64,000 nucleotides of DNA from Mobula birostris (GCF_030028105.1 NC_092376.1:170839613-170903612), one strand, 5' to 3'. Counted from the stretch's first letter, positions 437 through 50,788 are shown. Numbers and translations: made by a program. The notes: generated by a model not told the origin, from the letters alone.

Positions 437-706
437 TTGAGACGAGTTCACAGCAGCCTCTGTTGGGCAGTGACGTCACCCTCAGCTGTACCATCTCCAG
501 ACTCCCAGATACCGTCAGTCTCCACTGGAAACCAGTGGGCTCATCCCAGCAGAACAGGAGAAACACTGATCAGATCCGCCTGAATAACACCGCCTATCTG
601 ATGGTCCGACACGTTACAGTGAAGGATGGGAAGTTGTATCAGTGTGAAGTGCGGGAAAACGGAAACATTGTTCTCACAAGCAAAGCAGATTTTACTGTAG
701 GCACAG
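437..706 (+). CDS. IgSF receptor gene A, Ig domain D2 exon (C2-type); the gene starts left of the window
   Basis: Acceptor tttctcacag|, donor |gtaagt, 270 nt, phase 1-1. Reads VETSSQQPLLGSDVTLSC...SLHW...LYQCEVRE with canonical B-Cys, C-Trp and F-Cys. Paralogous to 10415-10681. Confidence 0.9.
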
Positions 707-1267: not shown

Positions 1268-1606
1268 CTTTATATCGGAAGCGTTACACCCTTTATCGTC
1301 CCAGCACAGATTACAGTGAACTCCACCTGGTTTGCTATTCTCGTTCTGCTTACACTCGTGGTGAGTGGACCTGGAAATCACGTCAACCACAGGACCAACA
1401 GAAACAAATAGCATCTGCAACAGTCTATCAGCCCATCAATGTCGGTAGCACCGACTTTGAGAATCGACTGATGACCTCGGTGAAAAAATTCAATGGCAAG
1501 AATTTCAGTGTGAGGATTGTCCCGGTTTTGTTTGGAGATGCCGGAGTTCACATATGTTCTCTAGGGTCAAATACATTTCCGACCATTGAGCTAATCACAG
1601 TGAAAG
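1268..1606 (+). CDS. IgSF receptor gene A, Ig domain D3 exon (V-type); absent from the ORF track
   Basis: Acceptor ctctctgatacag|, donor |gtagga, 339 nt open, phase 1-1. Reads LYRKRYTLYRPSTDYSELHLVC...WTW...NFSVRIVPVLFGDAGVHICSLGSNTFPTIELITVK. Paralogous to 23148-23483. Confidence 0.9.
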
Positions 1607-1684
1607 GTAGGAGACAGAATGTTGCAGTTGCGTTTACCAATTAAGTCGTTGTTTAGAATGTAAATAACCTGCTTGTTTCCACAG

Positions 1685-1945
1685 TCACGGCTGAACCGTC
1701 TGATCCAGTGACTGAGGGAGACACCGTTACCCTGAGCTGCTCTGTGTCTGACGTCACTGCATCAACCAGACTGGTTTGGATCAACGGAGATGGTGAAACC
1801 ATTGGAGACAAAACACTGACTGGGGAAGAGAAATCACTGAGTCTGATCATACAGAAAGCTGAGAGAGGCAGTGGGAAATGGACGTGTGGTGTGTTTGATC
1901 AAGACAGGCTCCGGATTATCGTCCCATATTATCAAGAGTGCAGTG
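1685..1945 (+). CDS. IgSF receptor gene A, Ig domain D4 exon (C2-type, WxC motif)
   Basis: Acceptor tgtttccacag|, donor |gtgagt, 261 nt, phase 1-1. Reads VTAEPSDPVTEGDTVTLSC...LVW...GKWTCGVF. Paralogous to 24724-24993. Confidence 0.9.
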
Positions 1946-2023
1946 GTGAGTTACTGCAGGTTTGCTCTTCATATTGAGAAACATGATCACATTTTGTGTC
2001 ATTAATTGTTCTGTTTGCTATAG

Positions 2024-2094
2024 TGAAACTTATTCATATTCTGTGTGGGAGTCTCGCTGATGGGGCTGGTCAGTCTGATGCTTTTGTGATCTAA
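2024..2094 (+). CDS. Candidate terminal exon of gene A; the spliced frame has no TM, and a TM-like stretch lies in a shifted frame
   Basis: Acceptor tttgctatag| follows a 78-nt intron. The phase-1 frame reads VKLIHILCGSLADGAGQSDAFVI*. The adjacent frame (2030-2086) reads LFIFCVGVSLMGLVSLMLL then TGA. Confidence 0.45.
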
Positions 2095-2819
2095 ATATTC
2101 TTCAGAAGTTAAGAAAGAAGCATAAGACTTGTTGCTTATGATCATTTTACTAAATAGTCCAAGAACCAGTGAAAATAGTGGAAAGTGTGTTGAGAGTCAA
2201 AGAGGAAAAGAGAAGAGCAGGAAAAGAGCAGAGGAAGAGAAGTTGATGAAAAAAGAGTGAAAGAGTGAACAGAGGAGATCTGATCTTCTTAAACCAAACA
2301 AATGATTCCATTGAGATAGGAATATAACCAATCATTTAACAGTTAACAAATTAAATAGCCACATTGAAGGAAAATTATATCTGACTCTGAAACTAAAGGT
2401 TATAAACCATTCAAAGGTTCATTTATTATCAAAGTATACAACTGTGAAATTCTTCTGTTCCTTGGAACCAAGAGGAAAAGAATAACAACACAATTATCAA
2501 CCCCCAACTACCCTCTCCCCGCACAAAAATGGAACAGGAACATCAACCCACGGATCGGGCAAAAAACACAGGAACTGAGAGATTTTCAGAAAAATGCTGT
2601 GTCATCTTTAAACACTGAACCATCTCATGTATGTCAGTAATTATATAAAAATACAAACAAGCATAATAAAGTTAAGCTACAAGAAAAATAACAATTCCAC
2701 AGCCCAATCCAACAGGATTATAATATAAACCATGGGATAACTCTGTGTTTCCAGAATCAATATTGAAACGTCTCTTTTCCCTGCATCACTGATTCTCTTG
2801 GGAGGCTCACGGAGTCAGA

Positions 2820-3105
2820 ACAACATGGAAACACAGAAAACCTGCAGCACAATACAGGCTTTTTGGCCCACAATGCTGTGCTGAACATGTACTTACTTCA
2901 GAAATTATCTCTGGTTACCCATAGTCATCTATATTTCCAAGCACCATGTACCTATCCAGGAGTCTCTTAAATGACCCTGTTGTACCTGCTTCCCACCAAC
3001 GTCACCGCAGCCCATTCCATGCAATCACCACTCTCGGCGTAAAAAACTTACCCCTGGCATCTCCTCTGTACCTCCTTCCAAGTACCTTAAAACTACACCC
3101 TCTCA
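2820..3105 (-). mobile_element. CR1 LINE 3' end fragment
   Basis: Same terminal sequence as the CR1 3' end at 23610 (acagaaaacct.cagcacaatacaggc...ggcccacaa). Confidence 0.7.
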
Positions 3106-3757
3106 TGTTAGATATTGGGTAATGTCAGGTAAATGGAGACTTTACATTGGTTTCCTGGACCAGACCCACTGCCACAATCACCACACACCTTCTCTCATGT
3201 CCATGCTGACCAATACTGAGCACATTCTACACATTAATGACAAGGTCCCGAGAGTCACTGGGCATCAGTGTAGAGACGCCACCCCAGACACTGTAAGGCA
3301 GTTAAAAGCTCTTAAAATTAAATTTCAATGGCAAATCTTTGAAAATCTCAAATTTTAAAATACAAGCAACATGCTTAAAACACGTGACTGAAGTTCAACT
3401 GAGAAATTCCTTCTCCTTTCCCCATCTTAAACCAGACCTGAACTGGGTCGGATTAGAGAGTGATACTTCAGTGTACTATTGGGAATCCCAGCAATTAGTG
3501 TTGCAACTGTGAATTAGTCACAATGAGACTGGACTGTCGATGTAAAATGGCTTTATTCAGCATGATAAGAGACGTTTTAGAGAAATTCTCAAAGGAATCC
3601 CGCTGAACTCAAAGTGCATTGATGTTTTCCACTGCTTAAGCACAAAAATAATAGCATGTGATTAAATACAGTTTTAATGGTTGTGATTGCATATTCTCCT
3701 TCAAAAAAGGGGGTGAAAAAGTTAAATCATCAGGAGTATTTGATAGCTCTGTGCCTG

Positions 3758-6700
3758 CATAGGTGGCCTTAGTTATGTTTCACCCGTTTCAACTGAAATG
3801 GGCCCCGCCCTCCCAGGAGCCCCCGACTGACATGCAAAAACTTAATGCACAGCTCCCAGACACCACAATGTTCTCCTGCTATTGCCAGCTGAACCACCAG
3901 TGGGTGCTCATTGACCGACATCTGAGAAAATACATCAAAATATTTACTTTACTAGTAAACATTGCTCCTAGCAAAGAAGGCTACTTTTCAATGAGAGGAA
4001 AATGAAATGCTCCTATCCTAGTGGTGCTAAAAAAAACGGAAAATATTAGACAACAAAACAAAACGTCTAAATAGTCTCCCAAAAGTTAAATCTTTCTTTG
4101 GTCCAGCATCTGTAAAAGACCCACTGACTGCAGTTGCTGCTGCACCATTGTCACAGCATGGGGCTGCAGTGCCAAGTGACGGTGTAAGCGGTACAGGAGA
4201 TGTTGATAATCAGAGCAATGAAAATGAGAAGAACAATTCTACTCAAACAGGTGGTGATAATGATGACCAAACTTTGTTTGATGAACAACCTCACAGCATG
4301 AGGACAGTCCTACAACTGAGACAGGTGAGGGAGATGCCACCACCAGCACAGCAGACAGAGAGAAAGCCCCACTAACATTCACAGAGACCAATCTGGCACA
4401 TTGGCCAATGCATGTTACCAGTGACCAACGGATTGACATTGTTAAGAGAGGTCCCGTTAAATTAGAGGACATTAACTTTCTACAGAGCCAATCATGCCGT
4501 CGTTTTACCAAGGACAGAGATCTTATGAAGATAAAAAATTGAGAAACCATTCGTAGGTCATGGTTAGTGTACTCAGAATCACCTGATTCAATCTTCTGTT
4601 TCTGCTGTACCCTATTTGGCAAGTGAAATCACAGTCTCACTTGCGGAGGTTTCAGAGTGTGGGAGCGACTCACTCTCACATTCCAGGATCATGAGAAGTC
4701 AAATGCGCACCGTGCCAACGTGGATAGCTGGTGCGAGCTGAAAACATGCTTAAGAATGCACAGTGCCATTGACAGCACGCACCAAGAAATGCAAATGCTG
4801 GAAAAGAAACACTGGAATGATGTCATGAAGAAGTTCATTGCCATAGTCTGTCACGTTGCAGAACGAAACCTTGCTTTCCATGGCCATAATTCCACCCTAC
4901 ATGAACCAAATAATGGGAACTTTCTAGGTCTGGTGGAGCTGCTTGCCGAGTTCGATCCAGTGATGAGCGAACATGTCAGATGAGCAGAGAAAAAAGAGAT
5001 TGCTGACCACTACATGGGGAAAACCATACAAAATGAGTTAATCACACTTATTGCAGACAAGACACTGGAAGCGATAACAGAGAGAGTAAAACAATTACGT
5101 TACTACTCGGTGATAATGGACTGCACCACTGACGCTGCACACGTAGAGCAGCTCTCTGTGACACTGCGCATTGTCACATGCCAAGTAAGTGTCGGAGCTA
5201 TTGCTAGTGAGCATTTGACGGTTTCCTACCAGTGCTTGACACAACAGGTGCAGGCCTAACCGACGTTTTCTTAACGCATATGGAGAAGTTAGGATTAGAT
5301 ATCTCAAAATGCAGGGGGCAGGCATGTGATAACGGAAGCAATATGCAGGGGAAAATAGCGGGGTGCAGAAGAGGATGCTAGATATTAACAAAAAAGCACT
5401 GTTTATGCCATGCGCCGGTCACAGCCTAAACCCAGTCATTGTCGATGCTGCAAAATCAACAGTGGAGTCTGTGAGCTTCTTTGGGGGTGCTGCAATGTCT
5501 ATACACACTACTCAGCTCATCGACACAGAGGTGGGAGCTTTTCAAGGAGAACGTCCCACAGATGACCCTCAAGGCCATATCCAACACGCGAAGGGAGTGC
5601 CGCATGGAAAGTGTGAAAGTCCTGCGCTACCAGCTTCCCGATGTTGGCAATGTGCTCCTGTCACTGATTGAACATGCCACACAGAAAGGTGACAGTGAAA
5701 CCACATCTGCAGCCAGAGGCCTAGAACAGGAGATCATGTCATGGAAATTCCTGCTGACTGTTTTCATCTGGTACAACGTTTTACATGAGGTGAATCGTGT
5801 CAGCAAGCTGCTTCAGAGCCCACAAGTGGGAATCGATGTGCTACAGCGCGAGGTGGAATATGTTCTGAAATTTCTCAAGGAATACAGAGAGAATGGCCTT
5901 TCATCCACCCAAACAGATGCCAGACACATAGCTGAAGAGATAGGGATGCCAATTGTCTTTCCTACTGCATGAATCAGAAAACCAAAACGCCAGTTCCAGT
6001 GCGAGTCCCAAAGTGCAGATCCTTCCCTGACAGTGGCACCCGAGGAACGGTACAAGAGAGAAGTTTTCCTTCCACTAGTGTGCTCTGCCATCACAGGCAT
6101 TAGTGAGTGCTTCAAGCCGATGGAGTCATTTTACAGTCTGTTTGGCTTCAGTTATGGAAGAGAGGAAATGAAAAAAGCCACCCAAAGTCGCACACTGAAA
6201 GACAGCTGTGTAAACATGGAGAGGACACTTGGTGATGTGGATGCTGAGGACCTTTTGCGCGAGGTGTCGGCTGCGGTCAATGCCATGCCTGCAAAAGAAA
6301 CCACTGGCCTGCAGGTTCTGAGCTACATTTACAGCAACAATCTGGTTGAACTGTATCCTAACCTCACCTTTGTTCTAAGACTCGTGCTGACAGTGCCTGT
6401 GACTGTAGCGAATGGAGAGAGAAATTTTTCAAGGCTGAATCTCATCAAAACGCATCTGAGGACAACTATGCTCCAGAAGCATCTGTCAGCTCTTGCTCAG
6501 ATATCAATTGAGCATGAAATAACAAGATCGCTGGACAAAGATGAGCTCATTAAAGCATTCTCAGCACTCAAGCACAGGAGGGTAGCGAAATTCTCGTGAT
6601 AAGTCTTTTAACACATTTTTAGCAGAAATTAAGTTTATAATTAAAATAATAAAATAAACCATGTATTTCACTCAAAATGTGTATAGGTGGTTAGGTGGCG

Positions 6701-7260
6701 TTTCCACATATCGTAATTTCTCTCTCCCACTTGCGCCCCTTCTCTCTCTCACTCTCCTCCTGTTCACTCTCCAGGCCTTACGTGAGCTGTCCGTGGTGCT
6801 GAAAGAGCGCGAGACGCAGTTTGTTGTAAACTTCCAGTAGTTAACTTTCAGACAGTTTATTGAATAAATAAAGTGTGAATTTTCATTAAATATGACATTG
6901 CTTTTGTTATTAATTTAATTAGAGGGAAATTGTTTTAGCTGTTGTTATGTCAGCTGATACCTGACACACAGTGTCATTCAATGCAGACTAGTTGCTGAAA
7001 AGGGCGAGGCTTCTCACTCCAAAGCAAAAAATGTCACTGTTTCAGTTTTTAATTAAGAGAATTGTTTGGATTATGTTGAGCTGTCTGTCCATTATGCTGA
7101 ATGTGCATATAATGCATCAAAGTTTAAGTCTGAAATTATACCATTATTGATGCAAACCAACTTGAATATTCGCTTTTTTTCTTTCTTTTTTTTTGGAAGC
7201 GGGGGTACGGTCCCATATTAACTCTTGAAACGGGCCCCCAGATGCTTAAGGCCGCCTATG
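3758..7260 (+). mobile_element. hAT DNA transposon (ZMYM1-like transposase), complete ends, disrupted ORF
   Basis: TIRs cataggtggcctta and taaggccgcctatg (13/14 match). Perfect 8-bp TSD tgtgcctg at 3750-3757 and 7261-7268. Confidence 0.92.
4550..6599 (+). pseudogene. Degenerate hAT transposase
   Basis: Fragments: TTF-type zinc finger SWLVYSESPDSIFCFCCTLF, YYSVIMDCTTD (catalytic Asp region), CAGHSLN, and the C-terminal dimerization motif LTVPVTVANGERNFSRLNLIKTHLRTTM. Split over 4-5 ORFs by stops and frameshifts. Confidence 0.85.
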
Positions 7261-7268
7261 TGTGCCTG

Positions 7269-7650
7269 TACCCACTGGAGTTCAGAAGAATGAGAAGGGA
7301 TCTCATTGAAGCCTACCAAATATTGATAGGCCCAGGTAGTTGGTCATGGAGAGGTTGTCTGCAATGGTGGGGGAATCTAGGACCAGAGGGCACAGCCTCA
7401 GAAATGAAGGACATGCCTTAAGAACAGTGATGAGGAGGAATTTCTTTAGGAAGAGTAGCGTGAATTTGTGGAATTCATTGCCGTTTACAGCTGTGGAGAC
7501 CAAGTCATCGGGTATATTTAAAGCGGAGGTCAATGACGGACATAAAACATTACAGGAGAAGTCATGAGAATCAGGTGTGTATGGAATGTATATCAGCCAT
7601 GATCTTGAGCAGTCTCGATAAGCCAAATTCTGCTCCAATGCCTCATGCTC
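7269..7650 (+). mobile_element. CR1 3' fragment interrupted by the hAT insertion
   Basis: Removing the hAT joins ...atagctctgtgcctg to tacccactggagttcagaagaatgag, restoring the CR1 RT C-terminal motif (LYxLEFRRMR). Confidence 0.7.
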
Positions 7651-8984
7651 TTATTTGGTTGTATACAAGTCTTGTATAGAAATACAAGTGTACAATGGTT
7701 GAAAATCTCCACTGACGATGTATCTTTGAATATTCTGACATTTGTGGACAATGTGAAGGCTTCTAAGGAAGAAGTGCGAGGCAATCAAAACATTATTATT
7801 TTATCATTGTGTTGAAGGATAGCTCTCTCTGTCAACAATAGGGTGTATTAAAGTGACAAGCCTTGTACTAGATGGACAATTGGTTCTTGTTTGTATTAAC
7901 TAGTCCACATTACAGTGGACGAGATGCTGAGCCATCTTTAAATGTATGAAGGTAGATAAGTCTCCTGGGCCTGATCTCGTGTATCCAAAGGCACTGAGAA
8001 GAAACTGCAGAGCCACAGTTAAGGTAAATCCATCAGTATTAATGAAAAGTGAAGTGCCAGATGACTGGATGGTGGGTAATAGTGGCCTTTATTTCAGAAG
8101 GGCTGTAAAGTAAAACCTCAGAATTATAGAGCAGTAATCTTAACATCTCCCATTTATAAGTTACTGAAGAGGATTCTGAGGGACAAGGTTTACATGTATT
8201 TGGAAAGACTGGAATTGATTAGGGACAGTCAACACAGCCCTACATTTGGGAGATCAAATCTGATTGAGATTTGAAGAGATAACCAAGAAAGGTGGATGAG
8301 TGAGGGTGTTGATATGGTCTATACAAACATGCATGAGAGCCATGGACCCCGTGGTACACCAATTGGTACCGACCTCCAGTCAGGAAATGCCAAGCAACCA
8401 CTATCCTCAGCCACCAGACAATCATGTTTCCAACTCTCCGAGACACCTTGAATACCTTCTGAAGCAACCTGTCATGGGAGGCATTGGAAAAGCCTCACCA
8501 AAATACACGTGAACCTCATCCTTCATTGCTGCACTATTCAAATTTCTTAATCATTTGATTTTTAATTAACTTATTTAATTGATTGTTATGAAACATTATT
8601 CTTGTTAAAAACACTTCGTGATTCAGAAAGGTTCATATTAATTTCAGGAGCTGTAATGAGATCTTCACCTCTGATGGGGGTAGACCAAAGAGTATTGGGT
8701 TCTGAAGTTTCAGAGCACCTGAACTGGTTTAGTTTTCTTCAATGAGAGTCGTCAATCACTTAGAGTTGCTTGTGTGTGTTTTTTTTTTACACTGCTTTGC
8801 ACTGTGGTCTCCTAATGCCTTCTTTTCAAGCTTATTAAGTTTATTTTGATAAGCTCAGAAATTCAATGTTCCATGTACACTTGAAGCAAATGCCCAATTA
8901 GCTGTGATTGCCGGGTCCGAGTTTGAGAACGTTACTTCTCGCAGTGCCGCTTGGCTGAGCCACAATGTCTTGGAATTTTTATGA

Positions 8985-9033
8985 ATGAACTCTCAACTGC
9001 GTCTCTACATGTTCTTTCTTTTCTCTGCACTTA
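8985..9033 (+). CDS. Tentative leader (signal peptide) exon of gene B
   Basis: ATG-initiated hydrophobic MNSQLRLYMFFLFSAL, 49 nt, ending in phase 1 as the D1 exon requires. The donor gtttcc is weak and the same AG could instead be an acceptor. Confidence 0.3.
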
Positions 9034-9225
9034 GTTTCCGATATTGCCAGCACTCATCGTGACAGGGCTGAAAGGATGTGTGAGAAATCCCAAACAATTT
9101 TAATCAGAAACTGTGAATGGAATCAGAACTCACAACTTCCTGAAAATTAATTTTCCATCTGTTCCTCATGACACAGATCACACTGAGAAACTGTTGTCTG
9201 ATTATTTTTACCTTTCCATTTACAG

Positions 9226-42500: not shown

Positions 42501-45500
42501 GGAAATCGAGCCAATGATATGAAATGCTTCAATGATAGGATGCAAAATGGGGCTGAGAAGTGGCAAATGGAGTTCAGCCCGGATAATAAACCAGTGAGGT
42601 GGTTTATTTTGGTAGGTCAAGTACGATGGCAGAATATAGCATTAATGGTAAGACTCTTGGCAGTGTGGAGAATCAGAGGGATCTTGGGGTCCAAGTCCAT
42701 AGGACGCTCAAAGCAGCTTCACAGGTTGACCTTGTAGTTGAGAAGGCATACGGTACATTGGTCTTCAATCAATTCAATCAATTTTGGGATTTAGTTTAAA
42801 AGCCGAGAGGTAATGTTGCAGTTATTTAGGACCCTGGTCAGACCCCACTTGGAGAAATATGCTCAGCTCTGGTCGCCTCACTACAGGAAGGACACGGAAA
42901 CCATAGAAAGGGTGCAGAGGAGATTTACAAGGATGTTGCCTGGATTGGGGAGCATACATTATGAGAATCGGTTGAGTGAACTGGGCCTTTTCTCCTTGGA
43001 CCGACAGTGGTGGAGGTGGATACAATAGGGTCTTTCAAGAGACTCCTGGATGGATACATGGAGCTTAGAAAAATAGCGGGCTATGGGTAAGCCTAGGTAG
43101 TTCTAAGGTAAGGACATCTTCGGCACAGCTTTGTGGGCCAAAGGGCCTGTATTGTGCTGTAGGTTTTCTATGTTTCTGTGTTTCCAGGAACTAATGAGAT
43201 GCCGGAGCCTGAGACCAGACATATTGCTGAATATATGTCTGCGAGTAGGAAGGCAATACAAGAAGGTAATAGACCAATCTCTCATTCAATGAATTTCTCT
43301 CCTTGTACTTTTGTGAAATTACTCACTCAACAGTTTGCAGGTTTGCAATTAAAATGTATATTTAGAGAATTGAATCTCAAGCATGAATCTGACTGATCAA
43401 TCCAATACTCTGTCTAGTGTCGACTATCCTTCACTCCCTCCCAGTCTTCTTCATACAGCATAGGGCTCTCTCTGCATTCTACAACAGTCCAATGTAGATA
43501 AACCACAACACTTTACCGTATGGACAATCCGCGTTCAAATCCTGCTGCTGCCTGTAAGGAGTTTGTACATTCTCCCCGTGACCGTGTGTGTTTCCTCCGG
43601 GTGCTCTCGTTTACTCCCACAGTCCAAAGACGTACTGGTTGGTAGGTTAACTGGTCATTGTAAATTGTCCTGTGGTTAGGCTCAGATTAAATCAGGAGGC
43701 TGTTGGGCAGCGTGGCTCGAAAGGCTGAAAGGGCCAATTCCGCGCTGTATCTCAATCAATAAACAAATAAACACACACAATGTGATCATACTTCTGGTAA
43801 ATGGACAGCTTGGTTAGTGGCTGCAGAACAAGTCCACATCACCTGCCCTCTGAAAGTGACCATCCATTTCATGAGATCTCATCCACTATTGAATACCTCC
43901 ACCACACTTCAGCAGTACTTCAGTGTGTCTGGAATCACTGAATATGATCAGTCAAAGTGTCAGTGTAGTGTGAGAATGCCATATTAGACAGCATTGCTTT
44001 CTCTAGAAATTAGGTGATATTTCTGAATATGCATGAACAGCAGAGCAGGCTTTCTTGAAAAACCTGATTTTTTTAATAAAGCAGATCATTCTGATTTTTT
44101 AAAATATGAAAAATCTCTTTCCAAATTCTAGCTCTCTCCTTATATTATTTAATTCTTATTGTCCAAATCTAATTCTATGAATATATTTAATGATCTGGCA
44201 TCAACCAGTGGAGAATTCACATCGCTCATTTTGTCTGGGAATTCCCCACTGCAGTCCTCAATGACTCCTGTTTTAAACTCTGATCCTGTCTTGAAGTCTC
44301 TGCTGCAGGAAACATCCTTCCTGGAGCACTTTGTTGGAATCTGTTGGTTTCCATGAGATCCCCTCTTATTCCTATCAGCTCCAGAGCACATAAGCTGAAT
44401 GAACCCAAACTCTCCCCGTGCATCTCAATTCCAAGACATGATGTGACCATACAGATTTTCAGCATCTAATATGCAGCATCACAGGCTGAATTTATATCCT
44501 GGAGAATTATATATCCTGTGGAAATAAAATCAAGTCAGAGGTGAGAGAGGTGGCTGAATGAAAACAGAGAAAAATAAATGAATTGATCATGTTTTGAATA
44601 TATTCCATTTAATACATATGGAGCAACACAATCTGTGTTAGACCATAAGACCACAAGATATAGAAACAGAACTGGGCCATTTGGCCTATCGAGTATGATC
44701 TGCCATTTCATCATGGCTAATCTATTTCACTCTCAGCCACAGTATCTTGCCTTCTCTCCAGAATCCTTCATGCCCTCATTAATCAGGTTATGTGGTGCGG
44801 AAAGCATGGCAGTACAAGCTCGGACTGTGTTGGTTGTTGACACAAACAACACGTTTCACTGTACGTTTCAATGTTTCTATGTTCATGTACAAATGAAACT
44901 AATCTTTATCTTTATCATCTTTGTTTCTATTTTGTCCCTGCAGACACAGAGGAAAGTATTCATTATGCATCCATCTGCTTCGAGAAAAATGCGCCAGGTG
45001 ATAAAATTGTTTGATTTTTTAAAATTTTTTTTGTCAGGATGAGGATTGTTGGTGATGAGTCTGAAACGCTTTGGGGCCCTCATATGGCCGTCCTGAGGCA
45101 AAGCTCCTCACTCACCCCTTAACACACAGTGGGACAGTCAGCTGAGGCTCAGTCCATAACCCAGCCTTCTCTGTGCAGGTCCAGTCTCCCCCCACAGATA
45201 CAAGCATGAACATCTGGGCTGATATTGCAACACAACGTTGCAATGTTGCTGGTCGAGTGCCAACCCAAGGCACAGTTCTGTCCTCAGAAGACAGATAAAG
45301 TTAGTCAGCACAATTCTGAATTAGTAAATGTGACTTATGTCTGATCTCCTGTCCATATCATCAGCGTCATTAAAAATGCGAGCTGGTTTGACTTGATTTG
45401 ATTCGATGCAAATGATACATTTCACTGTGTCACTGTGTCAAATCAACCTAGTGCATGACGGCAACTTTTTGCGTTAAATCAAATCAACCAAAAGTGGAAA

Positions 45501-48500
45501 TTTCCGGAGACCAAACATTTTGATCCTGATTCTGATTCCTGTTCCAACATGTCGGTCCATGACCCTCTCTTATGTCAAGATGAGGCCACCTTCAGGGTGG
45601 AGGAGCAACTTTTTATATTGTGTCTGGGCAGCCTCTAACCTGATGGCATAAATATCAATATCTCCCCCTCCTTTCTTCTTCTATTCCCCACTCTGGTCTC
45701 ATACATCTTCTCACCTGACTATCCCCTCCCACTTTTCCTTTCTGCTATGGTCCACTCTCCTCTCCTATCAGATTCCTTCTTCTCCATCCCTTTATCTTTC
45801 CAACCCAGCTGGCTTCATTTTTCACCTTCCAGATATCCTAACTCCCCTTCCCCCACCTTTTTATTTTGGCATCTTCCCCTTTCCTGACGAAGGGTCTCAG
45901 CTCGAAATGTCGACTGTTTATTCATTTCCATAGATGCTGCCTGATCTGCTGGGTTCCTCCAGCACTTTGTATGTGTAGCCTTGGATTTCCAGCATCTGTT
46001 GACTTTCTCCTGTTTGATATTTCACTATCTGGTTCGATGCAAGTCTCCAATCTCTCGCTCTTCCATTCGACCTCAAAATCATCAGATAGAGGAGCAGGAT
46101 TTGGTCATTTGGCCCATCAGGTTTGCTCCACTATTCAAACAATGTCTGATTCTTTTCACAAATACATTCACCCTGTAATCCTTAAACCACTAAACAATCA
46201 AGAACCTATTAATCTCTCCCTTAAATATACCCAGTTTGGCCACACAGGCCACTGTGGAAATGAAATCACATTCACAATTCCTCACTGACCCTGAGTCATC
46301 CAAGAATCATGGAAAGTTTGGTTCATTTACAACTATCCCTATAGCTCACTGAGGTTAGTGTATGTTTTACCCAGATGGATGGAAAGAAGTTTTATGGAAA
46401 TTCAAAGTTCAAAGTACATTTATTATCAAAGTTTGGGGTGTCAGGGAGGGGTAGCACTTCTGGTGGGGGAACACGTCGCATCCTTTTCAAGGCGGTTAGT
46501 CCACCTTTAGTCCCTACTTGGCACTCAGCTCTCACCTGTGGCTCCCCGTAGCTGTTTGCATGCGACAGCGGCCACACCCCAGGCAATGGCTTTGACAAGC
46601 CAGCTAAACTAGGTGAGGGTAGCCGACGGGTCTCAAACCATTGGTGAGATAGGTAGTTGTCTATTCCAGCATGTGAAGACAGACTCCGGTGTATTGAGCG
46701 GACGAGACCAATGGAAGGTCCAACGGTCAAGAAGGCGATCTCTGCAAGCGTCCTGGAATGTGTAGAGCAGGAGAAGATACAGAAGACATCCTGGTCATCC
46801 ACTGTGCCTAGTCCCATCTCCAGCCGTCTCGACTCTGTCTTGCCACTGGATCCAGATGGGAATTGGGAAGAAAGAGTAAAACTGACGCTGCGCAACTCTC
46901 CCTCACTTAAATCCAAATCACACGCTAGTCCCAACACCATCTGGTGTCGAGGTCCTCATCGACGTGGACGATGGTCAAACAGGATGTATACTATATACAA
47001 CCTTGCGATTTGTCTCCTTACAGTCAGCCACAAATTGAAGTAACCACTTAAAAAAAAGACTGTCTAACATCCAATGAGTAGGAAAAAAACTTGTACAAAC
47101 AATAAGAGTAAGCAAATAACTTTCAGAACTGAAATTCACAATAGTGAGTCCACAGCCACAAAGCCACTCATCACGACAGCCATTTCAGGAGCCCATTAGT
47201 TGCAGGCTGCACCCTTTGTGCAGCCCAGGGACAAGTAAATTTCACTGGGCACCAAGCTGATCCAATCCATCCCTTGCCTCTGACCCCAACACCCTGACCA
47301 TTTCAATCTGGCCCAGCTCTTAAATCACCCAAACCTCAGGTTGTTCCTCATTCGCAGACCTGGGCCCTGCCACTTTGATACGCTCTCGGCCGATTCTCCC
47401 CATACCCAACCTTTCTAATTTGGCCCGGCACTTCAATCAATCAAACTGATTAAACGAGCAATTGAATTTTTTGCTTATGTTTTGTCAGGAGAGAGTAATG
47501 CAGTCACTTTAGGACATTTGTATTCTATTTGTCACTTCCTTTATCAGTGTGATCCACTACTGTCATCTTTTAATTGTGATGTTTGCAATTATCACAGGGG
47601 AGAGACATGCCGCACCATCCTCCAATCAAGTGTCAGATACTGTAAGTACATTGGTCTGTTGTTGAAGTACCAAGTCCAACAAATATTAATTTCCAGATCA
47701 AATTTGTGAAGTTGTTTACAGATCTAAACAGATGAAATATCAACTGGCTTAAATATACACTCAATGTCCACTTTATGAGGTACATCCTGCACCCAATAAA
47801 GTGGCCACTGAGTGTCTGATCATGACCTTCTGCTGCTGTAGCCCATCCATTTCAAGGTTCTGCACACCACCTTGGTGATGGCCTCCACTGGTCGAGGTCG
47901 ACCACGGATGTTGCAACCCAGCTGTTTGAAGTTGATATGGAAGCTAGAGCAGTACAATACGGAGAACAAGCTGTTGCCCATACAGCAGGCTCTCCCTCTC
48001 CATGCAGCTGATGAATCCAAAGGAATAGCAAAGTCTGAAGCTGTTTGGCACCAGCGGCTTTGGAGGAGTTGCCAGTCAAAAATGAATTCATTGTAGGGAC
48101 TTCGGGAATGCAGTTCCAGATTTTTCCTTGAGATTTACTCCTTCCCTATGAGTGGGTATAGCCACAAGGCAGTGGAGGTATGAAATCAGAGTTTTTCTTA
48201 TCCTAGATTAGCCGCCAACCACAGCTGATGAGCCCCATTTGCCCAAAATGACTGGTTTTAAGGGGCCAGTAACCTGCCTTTGCCCCTTCTCCTTTCAGTC
48301 CAAAGTGGTTCTGTCAAGCTTAGCAGCTAAGCCACACGTGAAAGCCAGGTGCTGGATTGTTGTCAAAGACTACAGTATTTGGGATGCATGTCATTGGGAG
48401 CATTTAGTAGGTAGTGGAAGCTTATACCCACTACCCTCCCACCACCTCCTTCACTGACTAGGACAACCTTAAAGAGCCATCATCTCTGTAACATGTAGTT

Positions 48501-50788
48501 GTTTGAGTTACTGTTGCCTTCCTGTCAGCCTGAACCAGTCTGGCCATTCTCCTCTGCTCTCTCTCTTTAACAAGTCATTTTTGACCACAGAACTACAGCT
48601 CAGTGATTTTTTTTTGTTTTTCACACCATTTTCTAACCTCTAGAGTAGTGGTCACCAAACAGTCGATCGCGATCGACCGGTCGATCTTTGAGACTTTCCC
48701 AGTAGATCCTGAAAAAAATCAAAAATAAATAGCATTATAAAATGAGTAATACTAATTCGAATAATAGTAATATAGGAATACTTTCGCTACTGAAAGCTGT
48801 TTGTAAAGAGAGATTGTTTCCAGGTTGCGGGTTTTTAGTTCCGTTATTTCTGCCCAATGCGCATGTGTGTAGCTCCCCCGCCACGCACCGCGTCTTCAGC
48901 ATAGCTTGTGCTGCATCAAAGTGACCAATTAGATTAGATAAGATTACAGAATGTCGCAAACATCAATATATGGCACTTGCTCGTGATATCCTGATAGCAT
49001 GGCGGAGGCTCCACGAAAGAAAGCGAAAACGTACAAATTCCATCCAGAATGGGAAGAGGAATTTCTATGTACCTTGGCGAAAGACAATTGTGTATGTATG
49101 TTGTGCCACCAAACACAAGCACTGACTAAAAGAGGGAATCTGGAGCGGCACCACAACACCAACCACCAGAAGCTTAAAGACACCTACCCCGCAAAGAGTG
49201 CAATTCGTGCTAGGAAAGTTAAGGAGCTGAAATCTTGGTTGAAGGCCCAGCAATCGTTTTCACAAAATGTGCTGCTCAAAATAAGGCTGCTATTGAAGCA
49301 TCATTTCGTGTAAGTCACCTTTTGGCTAAACACTAGAAGCCTTTTACAGATGGCGATTTATTCAAGGAAGCAATGGCCATTACCGCAGAGACTGTTATTA
49401 CTGACTTTAAAAACAAAAGCGACATCACAACCGCAATACATAATATACCGCTTGGCCCTGCAACAGTGACAAGGAGGGCAGAGTCACTGTCAGAGTTCGT
49501 GGATTGACTTGTCACTCGGTGAATATTTTTCACTCCAGTTCAATGAATCCCTGGATGTAATGCAAACAGCTCAGCTTGTTGTATTTGTCAGAATGGCTTT
49601 CCAGGATTTTATAACAAAGGAGGACTTGCTCACTCCTTTGCAATTAAAGGGGAGAACGAGAGGTGAGGAGGATATTTACAATGAGTTTAAAAAATATGTC
49701 CGTGAAAATGACATTCTCATTCATAAACTTGTGGCAATTACAACTGATGGGTGTGCATGGTGGTTTTATAGCACTAAAAATCAGTGCCTACTTTGGGTCA
49801 ACTTATCTATGTGAAATTGCATTTTCACAGATGAAAATTATTAAATCTAAGTCCAGGAGCTGTCTTACTGACAGACACCTCACAGACTGTCTCAGACTAG
49901 CTGTCTGTAGTTATGAGCTAAATTTCAGGGAACTAGCAGAAAGTATTCGGCCCCGGTCATCACACTGAGTGCAACAGTCAATTTTTACTCATTTATTTTT
50001 CGTGTTGAAATAAAATTAAATAATGAAACTTAGAATTAAAGGTGTGAAGTATTGTAATATTCTTAAAAAAGACAGCTATGGCCTGTTTGATATGCTAGTT
50101 ACAGTATTTTCTTCTTTGAATTAATTTGAAAGTCTGACAAATGTATTTTATGTAATTCAAATACAATTAGCCCAAATAAAAGGCCTCAGATTGGAAGTAC
50201 AATCTGAGCTGTTTTCTCTCTGAACGGTTTAGTAGGTAGATCTTGCTTTTCACTAAGGTCGAAGTAGGGGATCTTGAGCTTAAAAAGGTTGCTGACCACT
50301 ACTCTAGAGACTGTTGTGTGTGATAATCCCTGGAGATCAGAAGTTTCTGAGATACTCAAATCAATGGTACAGCACCAATATTCCACAGTCAAAGTCACTT
50401 AGATCACATTTCTTCCCCATTCTGAACAACAACAAATGAACCACTTGACCATGTCTGCATGCTTTCATACATTTGATGGGAATGAAGGGTTATGGGGAAA
50501 AGGCAGGTAGGTGGAGATGAGTCCATGGTCAAATCAGTTATGATCTTATTGATTGGCAGAGCAGGCTCAATGGGACAGATGGCCTACTCCTGCTCCTATT
50601 TCTTATGTTCTTATTGTGTTGCTGCAACATGATTGGCTGATTAGATATTTGCATTAATGAGCCGATATACTGTACCTAATAATGTGGTCACTGGGTATAA
50701 CTGGTTTTTCTTTCTCCTTCAGAACCTGCCTTCAAATGACAATGTCTCATCTGTTATCTATGCACAGATAACAAAAAAACAGAAATGA
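9226..50788 (+). CDS. IgSF receptor gene B (spliced): V-C2-V-C2-TM-cytoplasmic tail with two ITIMs; CD4/LAG-3/G6F-like architecture
   Basis: Nine GT-AG exons join in one open frame ending at TGA 50786-50788: 9226-9570, 10415-10681, 23148-23483, 24724-24993, 28701-28808, 41313-41411, 44944-44997, 47598-47641, 50723-50788. Total 1589 nt, plus a phase-1 leader. Confidence 0.85.
10415..10681 (+). CDS. Gene B D2 exon (C2-type; F-strand Cys replaced by Trp)
   Basis: Acceptor tgtttccacag|, donor |gtaagt, 267 nt. Reads SDVTLSC...SLHW...NNTVCLMV...SLYTWEVQE. Confidence 0.92.
12534..13478 (-). mobile_element. 5'-truncated Rex1/Babar-type LINE inserted in the CR1
   Basis: ORF 12689-13480 with LFTIYTSD, QKFSDGSAIVG (degenerate YADD), YKYLG and RLYFLRRLRSF-like motif. 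AATAAA plus a (CATAGT)n tail at 12541-12570. Confidence 0.8.
14050..19857 (+). mobile_element. Full-length I-group (Nimb-like) LINE with ORF1 and EN-RT-RNase H ORF2, degenerate
   Basis: 15-bp TSD agcttcagtggctgg (14035-14049 and 19858-19872) and a (GAA)n tail. ORF1 has three zinc knuckles (CARCGGEH, CCNCGGNH). EN: LQLNARSL, CIQETW, GSDHYP. RT: PQGSVVSPTLF, LADD. RNase H: FTDGSK, PAHSGIMGNETADRLAK. C-terminal CDLCQETETVEHILISC. Confidence 0.9.
17202..17834 (-). mobile_element. Short non-autonomous retroposon inserted in the Nimb RT
   Basis: 6-bp TSD ttaatg (17196-17201 and 17835-17840), (ATC)n tail, 5' end ggagaagatggc. Removing it restores the RT sequence GLLIKLYLMGIG...MFNWVKDYL. Confidence 0.75.
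22195..22735. mobile_element. Tc1/mariner-type MITE
   Basis: Inverted ends of the ...tccactttattaggtac / ...aaagtggcc type. Same family as 47756-50697 and 51523-52107. Confidence 0.6.
23148..23483 (+). CDS. Gene B D3 exon (V-type)
   Basis: Acceptor tgtcttgcag|, donor |gtagga, 336 nt. Reads ELKLIC...KWTW...GNFRLRIVPVQFEDAGVYTCSLG, with the canonical DxGxYxC motif. Confidence 0.93.
23610..24492 (-). mobile_element. CR1 3' fragment in the D3-D4 intron of gene B
   Basis: catagaaacatagaaa tail. RT C-terminus LEYCAQFWLPHYRKDVETIERVQRRFTRML. Confidence 0.9.
24724..24993 (+). CDS. Gene B D4 exon (C2-type, WxC motif)
   Basis: Acceptor tgtttccacag|, donor |gtaagt, 270 nt. Reads VTAEPPDAVTEGDTVTLSC...LVW...RKWTCVLI. 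Confidence 0.93.
25545..26270 (-). mobile_element. Rex1-type LINE 3' fragment
   Basis: ORF 25691-26209 with KNKELVVDYR, FKFLSVHI and QQRLFHLRQLRKF. (AATTG)n tail. Confidence 0.8.
27269..28471 (-). mobile_element. Solo LTR, 1203 bp
   Basis: TGTCA/TGACA termini. Perfect 5-bp TSD gcctg (27264-27268 and 28472-28476). Confidence 0.9.
28701..28808 (+). CDS. Gene B transmembrane exon
   Basis: Acceptor gttttgacag|, donor |gtaagg, 108 nt, phase 1-1. Reads DYSFKHTTVVITGGPALLLIIILVMVLCLRKRKVT: uncharged hydrophobic helix followed by a basic stop-transfer stretch. Confidence 0.92.
31293..40035 (-). mobile_element. Gypsy LTR retrotransposon provirus, degenerate, with both LTRs
   Basis: Diverged direct repeats at 31293-32066 and ~39275-40035. 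Polypurine tract next to 32066. tRNA-Pro-like PBS (tggggtgcctgtccagg on the - strand) near 39255-39272. PNMA-like gag (36628-37149). RT (FKGVFSTDEFDVG, YASPI), RNase H (ILHTDANCEG) and integrase (HDDVGYLG, ITDHYTRYAQAFPTKDQ) in Gypsy order. Confidence 0.85.
37227..38603 (+). mobile_element. Solo LTR inserted in the Gypsy gag region
   Basis: TGTCA...TGACA termini. 5-bp TSD atcaa/atcga (4/5 match). TATA-like tataag near 37358. Confidence 0.85.
41313..41411 (+). CDS. Gene B cytoplasmic exon 1
   Basis: Acceptor ctgtctgtacag|, donor |gtaaca, 99 nt, phase 1-1. Reads GLENQRQESRRTGRNTEDDSNLDANTNEIQPIQ. Confidence 0.78.
42530..43180 (+). mobile_element. CR1 3' fragment
   Basis: WQMEFS and LVRPHLEKYAQLWSPHYRKDTETIERVQRRFTRML. 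gttttctatgtttct tail. Confidence 0.85.
43510..43765 (+). mobile_element. V-SINE (HE1-like) tRNA-derived SINE
   Basis: B-box-like gttcaaatcc followed by the conserved core tttcctccgggtgctc...ctcccacagtccaaagac. Confidence 0.7.
44944..44997 (+). CDS. Gene B cytoplasmic exon 2 (membrane-proximal ITIM IHYASI)
   Basis: Long pyrimidine tract ending tccctgcag|, donor |gtgata, 54 nt, phase 1-1. Reads DTEESIHYASICFEKNAP. Confidence 0.82.
45560..46005 (+). mobile_element. Probable Penelope-like element 3' remnant
   Basis: Degenerate EEQxxIxxLGSLxPDG-type coding end, then a pyrimidine-rich tract and the tail gatgctgcctgatctgctgggttcctccagca. Confidence 0.5.
47598..47641 (+). CDS. Gene B cytoplasmic exon 3
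   Basis: Acceptor aattatcacag|, donor |gtaagt, 44 nt, phase 1-0. Reads GERHAAPSSNQVSDT. It supplies exactly the phase change needed to read the last exon's ITIM. Confidence 0.75.
47756..50697. mobile_element. Tc1-type MITE expanded by internal insertions
   Basis: TA-flanked inverted ends (cactcaatgtccacttt / aatgtggtcactggg). The body is colinear with 51523-52107 once the inserts are removed. Confidence 0.6.
48646..50301 (+). mobile_element. Internally deleted hAT-Charlie/SPIN-like transposon (GTF2IRD2-like transposase remnants)
   Basis: TIRs tagtggtcaccaaac and ggttgctgaccacta. Perfect 8-bp TSD ctctagag (48638-48645 and 50302-50309). Fragments: BED-like CVCMLCHQ...NLERHHNTNH, LQFNESLDV, and FGSTYLCEIAFSQM. 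Confidence 0.9.
50723..50788 (+). CDS. Gene B terminal coding exon (distal ITIM VIYAQI)
   Basis: Acceptor tttctccttcag|. Phase 0 reads NLPSNDNVSSVIYAQITKKQK*. AATAAA motifs follow at 51217 and near 51273. Confidence 0.82.
   Translation, partial: NLPSNDNVSSVIYAQITKKQK

What the first reader, a model, noticed from the sequence alone, without database searches (positions are those of the whole stretch)
437..50788. Tandem family of four-Ig CD4/LAG-3/G6F-like receptors: an inhibitory member beside an apparently TM-less member
Seen in sequence: two head-to-tail paralogs with matching D2, D3 and D4 exons, the same phase-1 boundaries and conserved intron ends. Gene B ends in a TM and two ITIMs. Gene A has no in-frame TM after D4. 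Established: tandem IgSF clusters that mix inhibitory with activating or soluble members (KIR/LILR, SIRP, CEACAM, fish NITR) are fast-evolving immune recognition systems. Inference: this is part of a multigene paired or decoy receptor cluster built on the V-C2-V-C2 scaffold. I know that scaffold mainly from low-copy CD4, LAG-3 and G6F-like genes, so a lineage-specific expansion may be undescribed.
Basis: partly seen in the sequence, partly recalled or inferred. Interest (0 to 1): 0.82.

Follow-up and report, generated by a model that had tools for sequence, protein, structure and literature searches.

The report
One eight-domain inhibitory immune receptor gene
The two "neighbouring genes" are the front and back halves of a single ray gene for a long surface receptor made of two CD4-like four-domain modules with an inhibitory tail, and it belongs to a large shark-and-ray receptor family for which I found no published description.

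Summary
The sequence-level observation holds. Three Ig exons (437-1945) are repeated, after a further D1 exon at 9226-9570, by their homologues (10415-24993). A transmembrane (TM) exon and five cytoplasmic exons with two ITIMs follow, with the stop at 50788. All boundaries are AG/GT and all Ig exons are phase 1. No in-frame TM follows the first D4.

The "TM-less gene beside an inhibitory gene" reading is not supported. My model of "gene A" matches residues 143-431 of single about 1000-aa Mobula proteins at 87-90% identity. My model of "gene B" matches residues 433 to the end of the same proteins at 84-89%. The D4A donor (1945) and D1B acceptor (9226) are both phase 1. The resulting junction (PYYQExSG-SxNSIYF) is conserved in 8-Ig models from about 20 sharks, rays and a chimaera. 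No leader exon for "B" and no TM exon for "A" was found.

So this is one gene: two V-C2-V-C2 modules, then TM, then an ITIM tail. An AlphaFold model of the closest module hits CD4 first and LAG-3 next in both PDB and Swiss-Prot models, but the CD4 and LAG-3 tail motifs are absent.

Relatives in other genomes include ITIM, lysine-in-TM and TM-less forms, nearly all annotated "uncharacterized". I found no paper on the family.

The parts
437..706 (+). Module 1, D2 (C2-type Ig) exon, phase 1-1
   Evidence: Splice sites. Pfam Ig_3/C1-set/ig. 93% identical to D2 of unit 1 of Mobula P0237/P0239. RNA joint 705>1269.
1268..1606 (+). Module 1, D3 (V-type Ig) exon, phase 1-1
   Evidence: Splice sites. 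Weak Pfam V-set match below the curated cut-off (19.8 vs 26 bits, E 9.5e-4). RNA joint 1604>1683, cut +2.
1685..1945 (+). Module 1, D4 (C2-type Ig, KWTC = WxC motif) exon; donor CAGTG|gtgagt, phase 1
   Evidence: 91% identical to Mobula unit-1 D4.
1946..9225 (+). 7.3-kb intron between module 1 D4 and module 2 D1. It holds a hAT transposon relic (about 4657-6599) and a TM-like but out-of-frame ORF (2027-2086) that I reject as an exon.
   Evidence: In-frame junction G|GA gives ...YYQECS-G-SGNSIYF, identical in form to P0239 ...YYQELSGSGNSIYF. Dimer_Tnp_hAT. No leader or TM exon found.
9226..9570 (+). Module 2, D1 (cysteine-less V-like domain) exon, phase 1-1
   Evidence: Strong acceptor. No Pfam or PDB sequence hit. 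94-95% identical to D1 of unit 2 of P0237/P0239. Folds as an Ig domain in the model of the closest unit-2 relative used.
10415..10681 (+). Module 2, D2 (C2-type; F-strand Cys replaced, YTWEV) exon
23148..23483 (+). Module 2, D3 (V-type) exon
   Evidence: Pfam V-set above cut-off. RNA joint 23481>24722, cut +2, in 4 runs.
24724..24993 (+). Module 2, D4 (C2-type, KWTC) exon
   Evidence: RNA joint 24993>28701, GT..AG.
28701..28808 (+). Stalk and transmembrane exon (uncharged TM; ends ...LCLRKRKVTG)
   Evidence: 73% identical to the TM exon of Mobula P0207.
41313..41411 (+). Cytoplasmic exon 1. It is the homologue of the exon carrying HLYSN (YxN) in paralogues; the tyrosine is lost here (SNLDAN).
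43188..43265 (+). Cytoplasmic exon 2 (…HIAEYMSA…)
   Evidence: 73% identical to P0207..
44944..44997 (+). Cytoplasmic exon 3 with the proximal ITIM (SIHYASI)
47598..47641 (+). Cytoplasmic exon 4: 44 nt, phase 1 in and phase 0 out. It must be included for the distal ITIM to be in frame.
   Evidence: Skipping it gives ...KNAPEPAFK*, the ending of annotated models P0207 and P0208.
50723..50788 (+). Last coding exon with the distal ITIM (SVIYAQI) and stop codon (50786-50788)
   Evidence: Same ending (...ITKKQK) as P0237 and P0239.

Best explanation
Positions 437-50788 hold most of ONE gene. The signal-peptide exon and the first D1 exon lie to the left of the window. The gene encodes a type I membrane receptor whose ectodomain is two tandem CD4-like modules. 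Each module is V-C2-V-C2, that is, two rigid V-C2 rods. An uncharged transmembrane helix follows, then a 120-residue tail with two ITIMs 38 residues apart.

Shown: the exon structure, the open frame, collinearity with single 987-1020 aa proteins of Mobula, the conserved D4>D1 junction, and the CD4/LAG-3-like fold.

Inferred: ligand binding by the outer module leads to Src-family phosphorylation of the ITIM tyrosines. The phosphorylated ITIMs recruit SH2 phosphatases (SHP-1/SHP-2 type), which damp activating signals in the leukocyte that carries the receptor. Paralogues with a lysine in the TM and a short tail would signal the opposite way through an acidic-TM ITAM adaptor, making the family a paired-receptor system.

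Among the ray paralogues the V domains of the outer module are the most divergent. This fits ligand contact there, with the inner module acting as a conserved stalk. Skipping the 44-nt cytoplasmic exon 4 would remove the distal ITIM and could tune the signal.
For: Collinearity: in blastp, gene A (289 aa) matches P0237 143-431 at 90.0% and P0239 142-431 at 86.6%; gene B (554 aa) matches P0239 433-987 at 89.4% and P0237 433-1020 at 83.7%.

Junction: the 1945>9226 junction is in frame. The junction motif is conserved in 27 double-unit models from sharks, rays and chimaera.

Architecture: a unit HMM finds u1 at about 31-437 and u2 at about 435-850 in about 40 proteins of about 20 species. These include nurse shark GenBank AGQ17915.1.

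Tree: in the unit tree all unit-2 rows plus window unit B form one clade (support 100). Window unit A sits among the unit-1 rows.

No separate ends: every unit-2-clade model that extends upstream starts in a preceding D4, never with a leader. No leader was found for B. No K-TM or TM exon was found for A.

Fold: the AF2 model has pLDDT 86 and pTM 0.83, with continuous strands across both V>C2 junctions. Foldseek's top 15 Swiss-Prot models are all CD4, followed by LAG-3. The top 7 PDB hits are CD4 or LAG-3. VIA-align gives Z 17.9 for four-domain CD4 and rmsd 2.4 A over 168 residues against rat CD4 D3D4.

Tail and family: ITIMs and TM. Lys-TM and TM-less relatives. Per-domain identity among ray 8-Ig genes: unit-1 D1 66% and D3 71%, against 82-89% for all unit-2 domains.
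Against: No read or contig from this exact copy spans the 1945>9226 junction. The junction rests on orthology, on predicted models of other genomes, and on one nurse-shark database entry whose cDNA origin I could not verify. Because every Ig exon is phase 1, gene predictors can chain tandem genes, so some long models may be fusions (for example the 1710-aa S. canicula model). One RNA contig reads from D4 through the donor to 2018, so a read-through TM-less product is possible. The RNA contigs differ from the window by 4-10%, so expression of this copy is not shown. Phosphatase recruitment, cell type and ligand are all inferred.
Confidence: 0.8

Rival explanations
1. One reading: two separate tandem genes. 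Gene A would be a TM-less soluble decoy or a relic. Gene B would be a separate four-Ig inhibitory receptor.
For: Four-Ig TM-less models exist in relatives. Examples are M. hypostoma LOC134349884 (P0197) and models ending ...SGK or ...SGE, which look like read-through of the D4 donor. One RNA contig runs unspliced from 1922 to 2018. Read-through would end the protein at ...SGELLQVCSSY*.
Against: Collinearity with single Mobula proteins at 84-90% identity. Conserved junction. Unit B belongs to a clade that never has its own leader. No leader exon between 1946 and 9225. The read-through contig differs from the window and may come from a paralogue.
Confidence: 0.07
2. One gene with two products: the 8-Ig ITIM receptor, plus a secreted 4-Ig form made when the D4 donor at 1945 is not used (intron retention or early polyadenylation). 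The secreted form would act as a soluble competitor.
For: The unspliced contig 1922-2018 and low RNA depth at 2001-2200. An in-frame stop 30 nt after the donor. Poly(A) signals at 2350 and 2665. TM-less models in other species.
Against: The contig may be pre-mRNA, DNA carry-over or a paralogue. No 3' end was mapped. The evidence comes from assembled contigs only.
Confidence: 0.2
3. A structural or adhesion Ig-array protein, as the database names 'obscurin-like' and 'VCAM-1-like' suggest, with no immune-receptor signalling.
For: A long Ig array. A few automatic names. The profile search of PDB sequences scores CEA, pIgR and NCAM slightly above LAG-3 and CD4.
Against: Two canonical ITIMs are conserved from sharks to rays and also occur in a sturgeon homologue. 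Sister genes carry a Lys in the TM. Structure searches put CD4 and LAG-3 first by a clear margin.
Confidence: 0.08
4. This particular copy is a silent or decaying paralogue of an otherwise functional family.
For: No RNA contig matches the window exactly. The YxN tyrosine of cytoplasmic exon 1 is lost, and AEYMSV has become AEYMSA.
Against: All 13 exons in the window are open with canonical splice sites. The same tyrosine loss is present in the Mobula orthologue P0239, which points to an inherited state rather than decay.
Confidence: 0.1

Closest known systems
CD4 / LAG-3 family (MHC class II co-receptor and checkpoint receptor)
   Same: Four-domain V-C2-V-C2 module. A continuous beta-strand runs from V into C2, giving two rigid rods. 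WxC motif in D4. D1 is encoded by one exon, as in shark CD4 and LAG-3. These are the best structural matches in PDB and in Swiss-Prot models. LAG-3 is also inhibitory, through an ITIM-like motif.
   Different: Sequence identity is only 11-19% in the structural alignments. The module is duplicated to give eight domains. D2 has YxC or YxW rather than WxC. D1 lacks the disulphide. There is no Cx(C/H) LCK clasp and no (F/Y)xxL(D/E) motif; instead there are two classical ITIMs spread over five cytoplasmic exons. The family is multigene, with Lys-TM partners. It is not the CD4/LAG-3 locus as far as can be judged (no synteny data here).
G6F (mammals) / G6f-like (teleost thrombocyte collagen receptor)
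   Same: G6f-like has four Ig domains, a TM and a tail with YxN, and was reported to resemble CD4/LAG-3 (PMC3528668; my own recollection of Ohashi 2010). Paralogues of the window's gene carry a YxN (HLYSN). Distant homologues in sturgeon and bichir end in YxN motifs.
   Different: G6f-like signals through an ITAM and is a single-copy four-Ig gene. This gene has ITIMs and eight Ig domains, and has lost the YxN tyrosine. Homology to G6F or G6f-like was not tested, because no such sequence was available through the tools.
Paired Ig-like receptor families (KIR/LILR, SIRP, CEACAM, teleost LITR/NITR/NILT)
   Same: A multigene family that mixes ITIM-tailed members with short-tailed members carrying a basic TM residue, plus soluble forms. 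The membrane-distal V domains are the most divergent.
   Different: A different domain scaffold (CD4-like rods). A conserved double-module 8-Ig form, and orthology traceable across all elasmobranchs sampled. This is slower turnover than KIR or NITR.

Membership tests
CD4/LAG-3 family | Ectodomain module of four Ig domains in the order V-C2-V-C2 | tested here: met
   Pfam V-set on D3 (above the curated cut-off in module 2, below it in module 1) and Ig_3/ig/C1-set on D2 and D4. The AF2 model has four Ig domains. The module is present twice.
CD4/LAG-3 family | Continuous beta-strand joining V strand G to C2 strand A (rod-like D1D2 and D3D4) | tested here: met
   The model has single strands 103-117 and 304-319 across both junctions. 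D3D4 superposes on rat CD4 D3D4 at 2.4 A over 168 residues, Z 15.9. This is a predicted model of the closest unit-2 relative used, not of the window protein itself.
CD4/LAG-3 family | WxC motif in both D2 and D4 (Triebel 1990, cited in PMC10768021) | tested here: inconclusive
   D4 of both modules has KWTC. D2 has LYQC (module 1) and LYTW (module 2), so half of the criterion is met.
CD4/LAG-3 family | Cytoplasmic Cx(C/H) (CD4) or (F/Y)xxL(D/E) (LAG-3) motif; LAG-3 tail encoded by a single exon | tested here: not met
   The tail has neither motif and is encoded by five exons. Criteria are from PMC10768021.
CD4/LAG-3 family | Position in the conserved CD4/LAG-3 genomic neighbourhood | not testable with these tools
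   No other host gene lies in the window, and DNA of the annotated relatives could not be fetched.
CD4/LAG-3 family | Closest structural relatives are CD4 and LAG-3 | tested here: met
   By sequence profile, LAG-3 and CD4 reach only E about 3e-8, below CEA, pIgR and NCAM.
G6F / G6f-like | Four Ig domains, TM, tail with YxN and (in fish) an ITAM split over two exons | tested here: not met
   This gene has eight Ig domains, no ITAM and no YxN. Criteria are from PMC3528668. Sequence homology to G6F or G6f-like was not tested.
ITIM-bearing inhibitory immunoreceptors | Type I membrane protein with one or more (S/I/V/L)xYxx(I/V/L) motifs in the tail, usually two | tested here: met
   IHYASI and VIYAQI, 38 residues apart; uncharged TM. 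Phosphatase binding was not tested.
Paired activating/inhibitory receptor family | Close paralogues with a basic TM residue and a short tail | tested here: met
   Lys-TM (…GYL(L/F)VKL…) members occur in Mobula, Hypanus, Pristis, Rhinoraja, Scyliorhinus, Pristiophorus, Heptranchias and Chiloscyllium. None is in this window. Adaptor pairing was not tested.

The most novel reading that the evidence does not exclude
The gene belongs to a third, so far undescribed branch of the CD4/LAG-3 structural superfamily, possibly the cartilaginous-fish counterpart of G6F/G6f-like. This branch predates the shark-ray-chimaera split and has more distant relatives in sturgeon, bichir, eel and coelacanth. In elasmobranchs it works as a clustered paired-receptor system: 8-Ig and 4-Ig ITIM receptors, Lys-TM activating partners and soluble forms. 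A diversifying outer module sits on a conserved inner module.
Probability: 0.45. Interest if true: 0.7.

Novelty: new variant of a known kind. Interest (0 to 1): 0.55.

Why it matters
CD4 and LAG-3 are usually treated as a small, low-copy family. Whether cartilaginous fish have a full CD4-type system was long debated (Venkatesh 2014 versus Takizawa 2023). A large family built on the same rod-like V-C2-V-C2 module is present from chimaera to manta. It has inhibitory, activating-type and soluble members, and a conserved duplicated (eight-domain) form. This shows that the scaffold was used far more widely in early jawed vertebrates than the literature I could search records. It also gives comparative immunologists a candidate paired-receptor system in a lineage for which I know of no KIR/LILR-, NITR- or LITR-like family (my own knowledge; my searches found none either). 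For genome annotation, the case is a warning that internal module duplications with all-phase-1 exons can be read as tandem genes, and tandem genes as modules.

Tried and rejected
1. TM exon for "gene A". tblastn with Lys-TM and ITIM-type TM exons of seven relatives found nothing in 1946-9225. A local DNA alignment of 1946-2400 against the TM exon of the second half scored no better than shuffles (23 against a mean of 23.5). The hydrophobic ORFs at 1987-2091 and 2027-2086 lie in a T-rich acceptor tract and are out of frame or blocked by stops. I rejected them as exons.

2. Leader exon for "gene B". An ATG plus hydrophobic core plus phase-1 donor scan, and tblastn with 21 family N-termini, gave only one weak candidate (6661-6781, E=4). 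It is not accepted.

3. Sequence-only identification. PDB phmmer with D3 gave MXRA8, JAML and PD-L1, and D1 gave nothing. This was uninformative for family assignment.

4. Fetching Mobula or Scyliorhinus DNA for synteny and intron comparison failed because the files were too large.

5. Naming via sturgeon homologues returned only 'uncharacterized'. AFDB clusters gave no G6F-named hit.

6. The supplement of Venkatesh 2014, checked for the nurse shark 'obscurin-like' entry, is not held.

7. The RNA test of the 1945>9226 junction could not be run. No junction or loose end at 1945 appeared among the rows shown.


Full report
**What is in the sequence**

The + strand of 437-50788 carries thirteen coding exons. 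Self-comparison pairs three Ig exons at the left end with three further on. D2 433-711 pairs with 10399-10701 (64.5% aa). D3 1405-1620 pairs with 23273-23572 (60%). D4 1708-1950 pairs with 24747-25004 (54%). blastn shows that only these exons, and 15-38 nt of the intron ends in front of them, are alike.

Splice-site inspection and assembly give the following exons.
- First half: 437-706, 1268-1606 and 1685-1945.
- Second half: 9226-9570, 10415-10681, 23148-23483 and 24724-24993.
- TM exon: 28701-28808.
- Cytoplasmic exons: 41313-41411, 43188-43265, 44944-44997, 47598-47641 and 50723-50788.

Every boundary is AG...GT. All Ig, TM and cyt1-3 exons are phase 1-1. The 44-nt exon 47598-47641 shifts the phase from 1 to 0, so the last exon reads ...SSVIYAQITKKQK*.

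The second half assembles into an open 554-codon frame. Its hydrophobic TM is uncharged. The two ITIMs, IHYASI and VIYAQI, lie 38 residues apart.

Pfam calls module-2 D3 V-set above its curated cut-off; module-1 D3 matches V-set only weakly, below the cut-off (19.8 bits, E 9.5e-4). It calls D2 and D4 Ig_3/ig/C1-set. It gives nothing for D1, which has no cysteine pair.

That includes the point that no transmembrane segment is in frame after the first D4. The hydrophobic ORF 2027-2086 is one base out of register with the only good acceptor (2023|2024), and it ends in a stop.

**RNA**

Public runs that share 31-mers with the region were found. Their assembled contigs show these joints.
- 705>1269 and 1604>1683 (cut +2) in the first half.
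- 23481>24722 (cut +2) in four runs, and 24993>28701 in two runs.

The exon limits are therefore used by real transcripts. The contigs differ from the window by about 4-10%, and a DNA run that matches unique parts of the window exactly shows the same differences in the exons. I therefore take these transcripts to come from close paralogues or relatives, not from this copy.

One contig runs unspliced from 1922 to 2018. Neither laid stretch contained both 1945 and 9226, so the decisive junction was not tested.

**What the gene is**

An exhaustive phmmer search with D3 and two word-indexed searches found well over a hundred relatives.
- Sharks: Scyliorhinus, Carcharodon, Cetorhinus, Rhincodon, Chiloscyllium, Hemiscyllium, Stegostoma, Ginglymostoma, Heterodontus, Heptranchias, Pristiophorus.
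- Rays and skates: Mobula, Hypanus, Hemitrygon, Pristis, Narcine, Leucoraja, Amblyraja, Rhinoraja.
- Chimaera: Callorhinchus.
- More distant: sturgeon, paddlefish, bichir, eel, carp and coelacanth.

Almost all are named 'uncharacterized'. A few carry automatic names such as obscurin-like, VCAM-1-like or CD276 homolog.

About forty of the relatives are 850-1030 aa long. A profile HMM of one four-Ig unit finds two units in each, at about 31-437 and 435-850.

The decisive comparison is.
- My model of 'gene A' (289 aa, D2-D4) aligns to residues 143-431 of Mobula hypostoma LOC134348853 (P0237, 1020 aa) at 90.0% identity, and to 142-431 of M. birostris XP_072120184 (P0239, 987 aa) at 86.6%.
- 'Gene B' (554 aa) aligns to residues 433-987 of P0239 at 89.4%, and to 433-1020 of P0237 at 83.7%.

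The two halves of the window are thus contiguous in single orthologous proteins. The one residue between them is the junction codon. In the window, the D4 donor at 1945 and the D1 acceptor at 9226 are both phase 1 and give ...YYQECS-G-SGNSIYFLHQEG.... P0239 reads ...YYQELSGSGNSIYFLHQEG....

The same junction, PYY(L/Q)E(P/L)SG followed by x(N)xIYF.HQEGNFVLKGPDNPG, is present in all 27 double-unit models examined, including the chimaera. It is also present in nurse shark GenBank AGQ17915.1 (916 aa). I infer that this entry is transcript-derived, because to my knowledge it predates any nurse-shark genome assembly. I could not verify this.

A FastTree phylogeny of 149 units gives two clades.
- Every elasmobranch 'unit 2', together with window unit B, forms one clade (support 100).
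- 'Unit 1' rows, all single-unit four-Ig genes and window unit A form a sister clade (support 100).

The internal duplication is therefore older than the shark-ray split. Window units A and B sit next to units 1 and 2 of the same Mobula genes.

Every unit-2-clade model that extends upstream begins in a preceding D4, never with a signal peptide. In the window I found no leader exon for the second half and no TM exon for the first half.

I conclude, at about 0.85, that 437-50788 is one gene.

**Fold and family**

The model used was the ectodomain of a Mobula unit-2 relative (P0168 residues 439-850). It was predicted with a 38-sequence family alignment and has mean pLDDT 86 and pTM 0.83. It shows single long strands (103-117 and 304-319) running from each V domain into the following C2 domain. 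This is the rare feature that makes CD4 and LAG-3 rod-like (PMC10768021).

The structure searches agree.
- Foldseek against 550,129 Swiss-Prot models returns CD4 of thirteen mammals as the first thirteen hits, with LAG-3 of three species also in the top nineteen. The alignments are four-domain, collinear and at E about 1e-20.
- Against the PDB, the first seven hits are CD4 and LAG-3.
- VIA-align gives Z 17.9 for four-domain CD4. It gives 2.4-3.5 A over 168-180 residues for the two-domain rods.

D4 of both modules carries the unusual WxC motif (KWTC). D2 does not.

Against membership in CD4/LAG-3 proper:
- Structural-alignment identity is only 11-19%.
- The sequence profile scores CEA, pIgR and NCAM slightly above LAG-3 and CD4.
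- The tail has neither Cx(C/H) nor (F/Y)xxL(D/E), and it is split over five exons.

I therefore file the gene as a distinct family with the CD4/LAG-3 architecture, not as CD4 or LAG-3. A link to G6F/G6f-like (four Ig domains, YxN, ITAM; PMC3528668) is plausible. Paralogues carry HLYSN, and the sturgeon and bichir homologues end in YxN motifs. This link was not tested, because no G6F sequence was within reach.

**Family anatomy**

The tails fall into three kinds.
1. An uncharged TM plus a long tail with YxN, AEYMSV, (I/L)HY(G/A)SI and (V/I)IYAQI. This kind occurs on both 8-Ig and 4-Ig ectodomains. A sturgeon homologue has the same tail layout (YSN..ELQAM, LHYVTF, VVYSSI).
2. A TM of the type ...GYL(L/F)VKL... 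with a lysine, followed by a short tail. It occurs mostly on 4-Ig forms and sometimes on 8-Ig forms.
3. No TM, ending a few residues after D4 (...SGK or ...SGE). This looks like read-through of the D4 donor.

Mobula hypostoma alone has at least nine loci on one chromosome record: LOC134348851-134348854, 134348858-134348860 and 134349884/5. The near-consecutive identifiers suggest a cluster, but this is an inference.

The window's closest relatives are Mobula proteins at 84-90% identity, never 100%. Another note of this scan calls the genome a giant manta. If that is right, this copy is a paralogue not represented among the models I retrieved.

**Mechanism**

Shown: a type I receptor with eight Ig domains and two ITIMs.

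Inferred from established ITIM biology: tyrosine phosphorylation by Src kinases and recruitment of SH2 phosphatases give inhibitory signalling. Lys-TM paralogues pair with acidic-TM ITAM adaptors.

Among ten myliobatiform 8-Ig genes, mean pairwise identity is 66% for unit-1 D1 and 71% for unit-1 D3. It is 86% for unit-1 D2 and D4, and 82-89% for all unit-2 domains. This fits ligand contact at the outer V domains and a conserved inner stalk.

Skipping the 44-nt exon 47598-47641 yields ...KNAPEPAFK*. That is exactly the ending of annotated models in Mobula and Hemitrygon (P0207, P0208). It would delete the distal ITIM and may be a regulated switch. Ligand and cell type are unknown.

**Literature**

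Searches for the family, its accession numbers, G6F in sharks, and paired Ig receptors in cartilaginous fish found nothing that describes it. The library covers open-access papers only, so 'undescribed' is provisional.

**Verdict**

- The specific interpretation (a TM-less member beside an inhibitory member) is replaced by a single double-module gene.
- The broader idea is supported by data from other genomes: an expanded, uncharacterised paired-receptor family on the CD4/LAG-3 scaffold.
- Novelty: a new variant of a known kind.
- Interest: moderate (0.55).

Noticed in passing
window 47598-47641 and 50723-50740: The 44-nt cytoplasmic exon 4 is the only exon that changes phase. Without it the last exon reads EPAFK* and the distal ITIM is lost. 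Annotated models in Mobula hypostoma (P0207) and Hemitrygon akajei (P0208) end in just this way, and both are D1-D2-TM short forms.
   Followed up: partly
window 10415-10681 (module 2 D2): The F-strand cysteine is replaced by Trp (LYTWEV) while the B-strand Cys (LSCTIS) is kept. The same YTW(E/D)V is seen in unit 2 of manta, nurse shark and other 8-Ig models. This leaves a conserved unpaired cysteine or an unusual pairing in the inner module.
   Followed up: partly
window 9583-9666, minus strand: The last 28 residues of the Mobula hypostoma LOC134349884 model (P0197, a TM-less four-Ig model) match the antisense strand just downstream of the D1 exon at 57% identity (E 2e-6). The stretch is unique in the window. 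It could be an annotation artefact, an inversion in Mobula or an antisense exon.
   Followed up: partly
window 957-1060: A short local duplication: the last 35 codons' worth of the ORF that runs from the D2 exon into its intron (about 697-804) recurs at 957-1007 and 995-1060 (59-65% aa in two frames), within the D2-D3 intron.
   Followed up: no
window 1080-1181 and 1323-1352: Weak matches to family leader and D1-start motifs (QNIKHFYI against KNLKHFYI; PPGLLFSFCL against PAGLMFSFCV) lie in the D2-D3 intron and, out of frame, in the D3 exon. E values are 0.06-0.3, so they may be chance.
   Followed up: no
window 4657-6599 (+); 48999-49968 (+): A hAT-type transposon relic (Dimer_Tnp_hAT, E 1e-10) sits in the intron between the two modules. 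A second set of transposase-like ORFs lies in the last intron; these were not scanned against Pfam.
   Followed up: partly
window 11131-13480 (-), 14899-19706 (+), 32570-35407 (-), 56051-59751 (+): The introns and the 3' flank are full of retroelement relics. The 14.9-19.7 kb block has reverse transcriptase and RNase H. The 32.9-33.2 kb stretch has an Integrase_H2C2 zinc domain. An endonuclease plus RT LINE sits in the AT-rich 54-60 kb block (GC 30-36%).
   Followed up: partly
window 20191-20369, 27819-27997, 38030-38184: Minisatellites of period 36, 68 and 42 nt (2.7-5 copies, 84% matches) lie inside long spurious ORFs, in stretches of marked GC skew.
   Followed up: no
window 2147-2644: Both DNA contigs and an RNA-run contig of the best-matching organism join 2147 to 2642/2644 (non-splice ends TA..TA). 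This suggests a roughly 495-bp insertion/deletion polymorphism or a repeat in the intron after the first D4.
   Followed up: no
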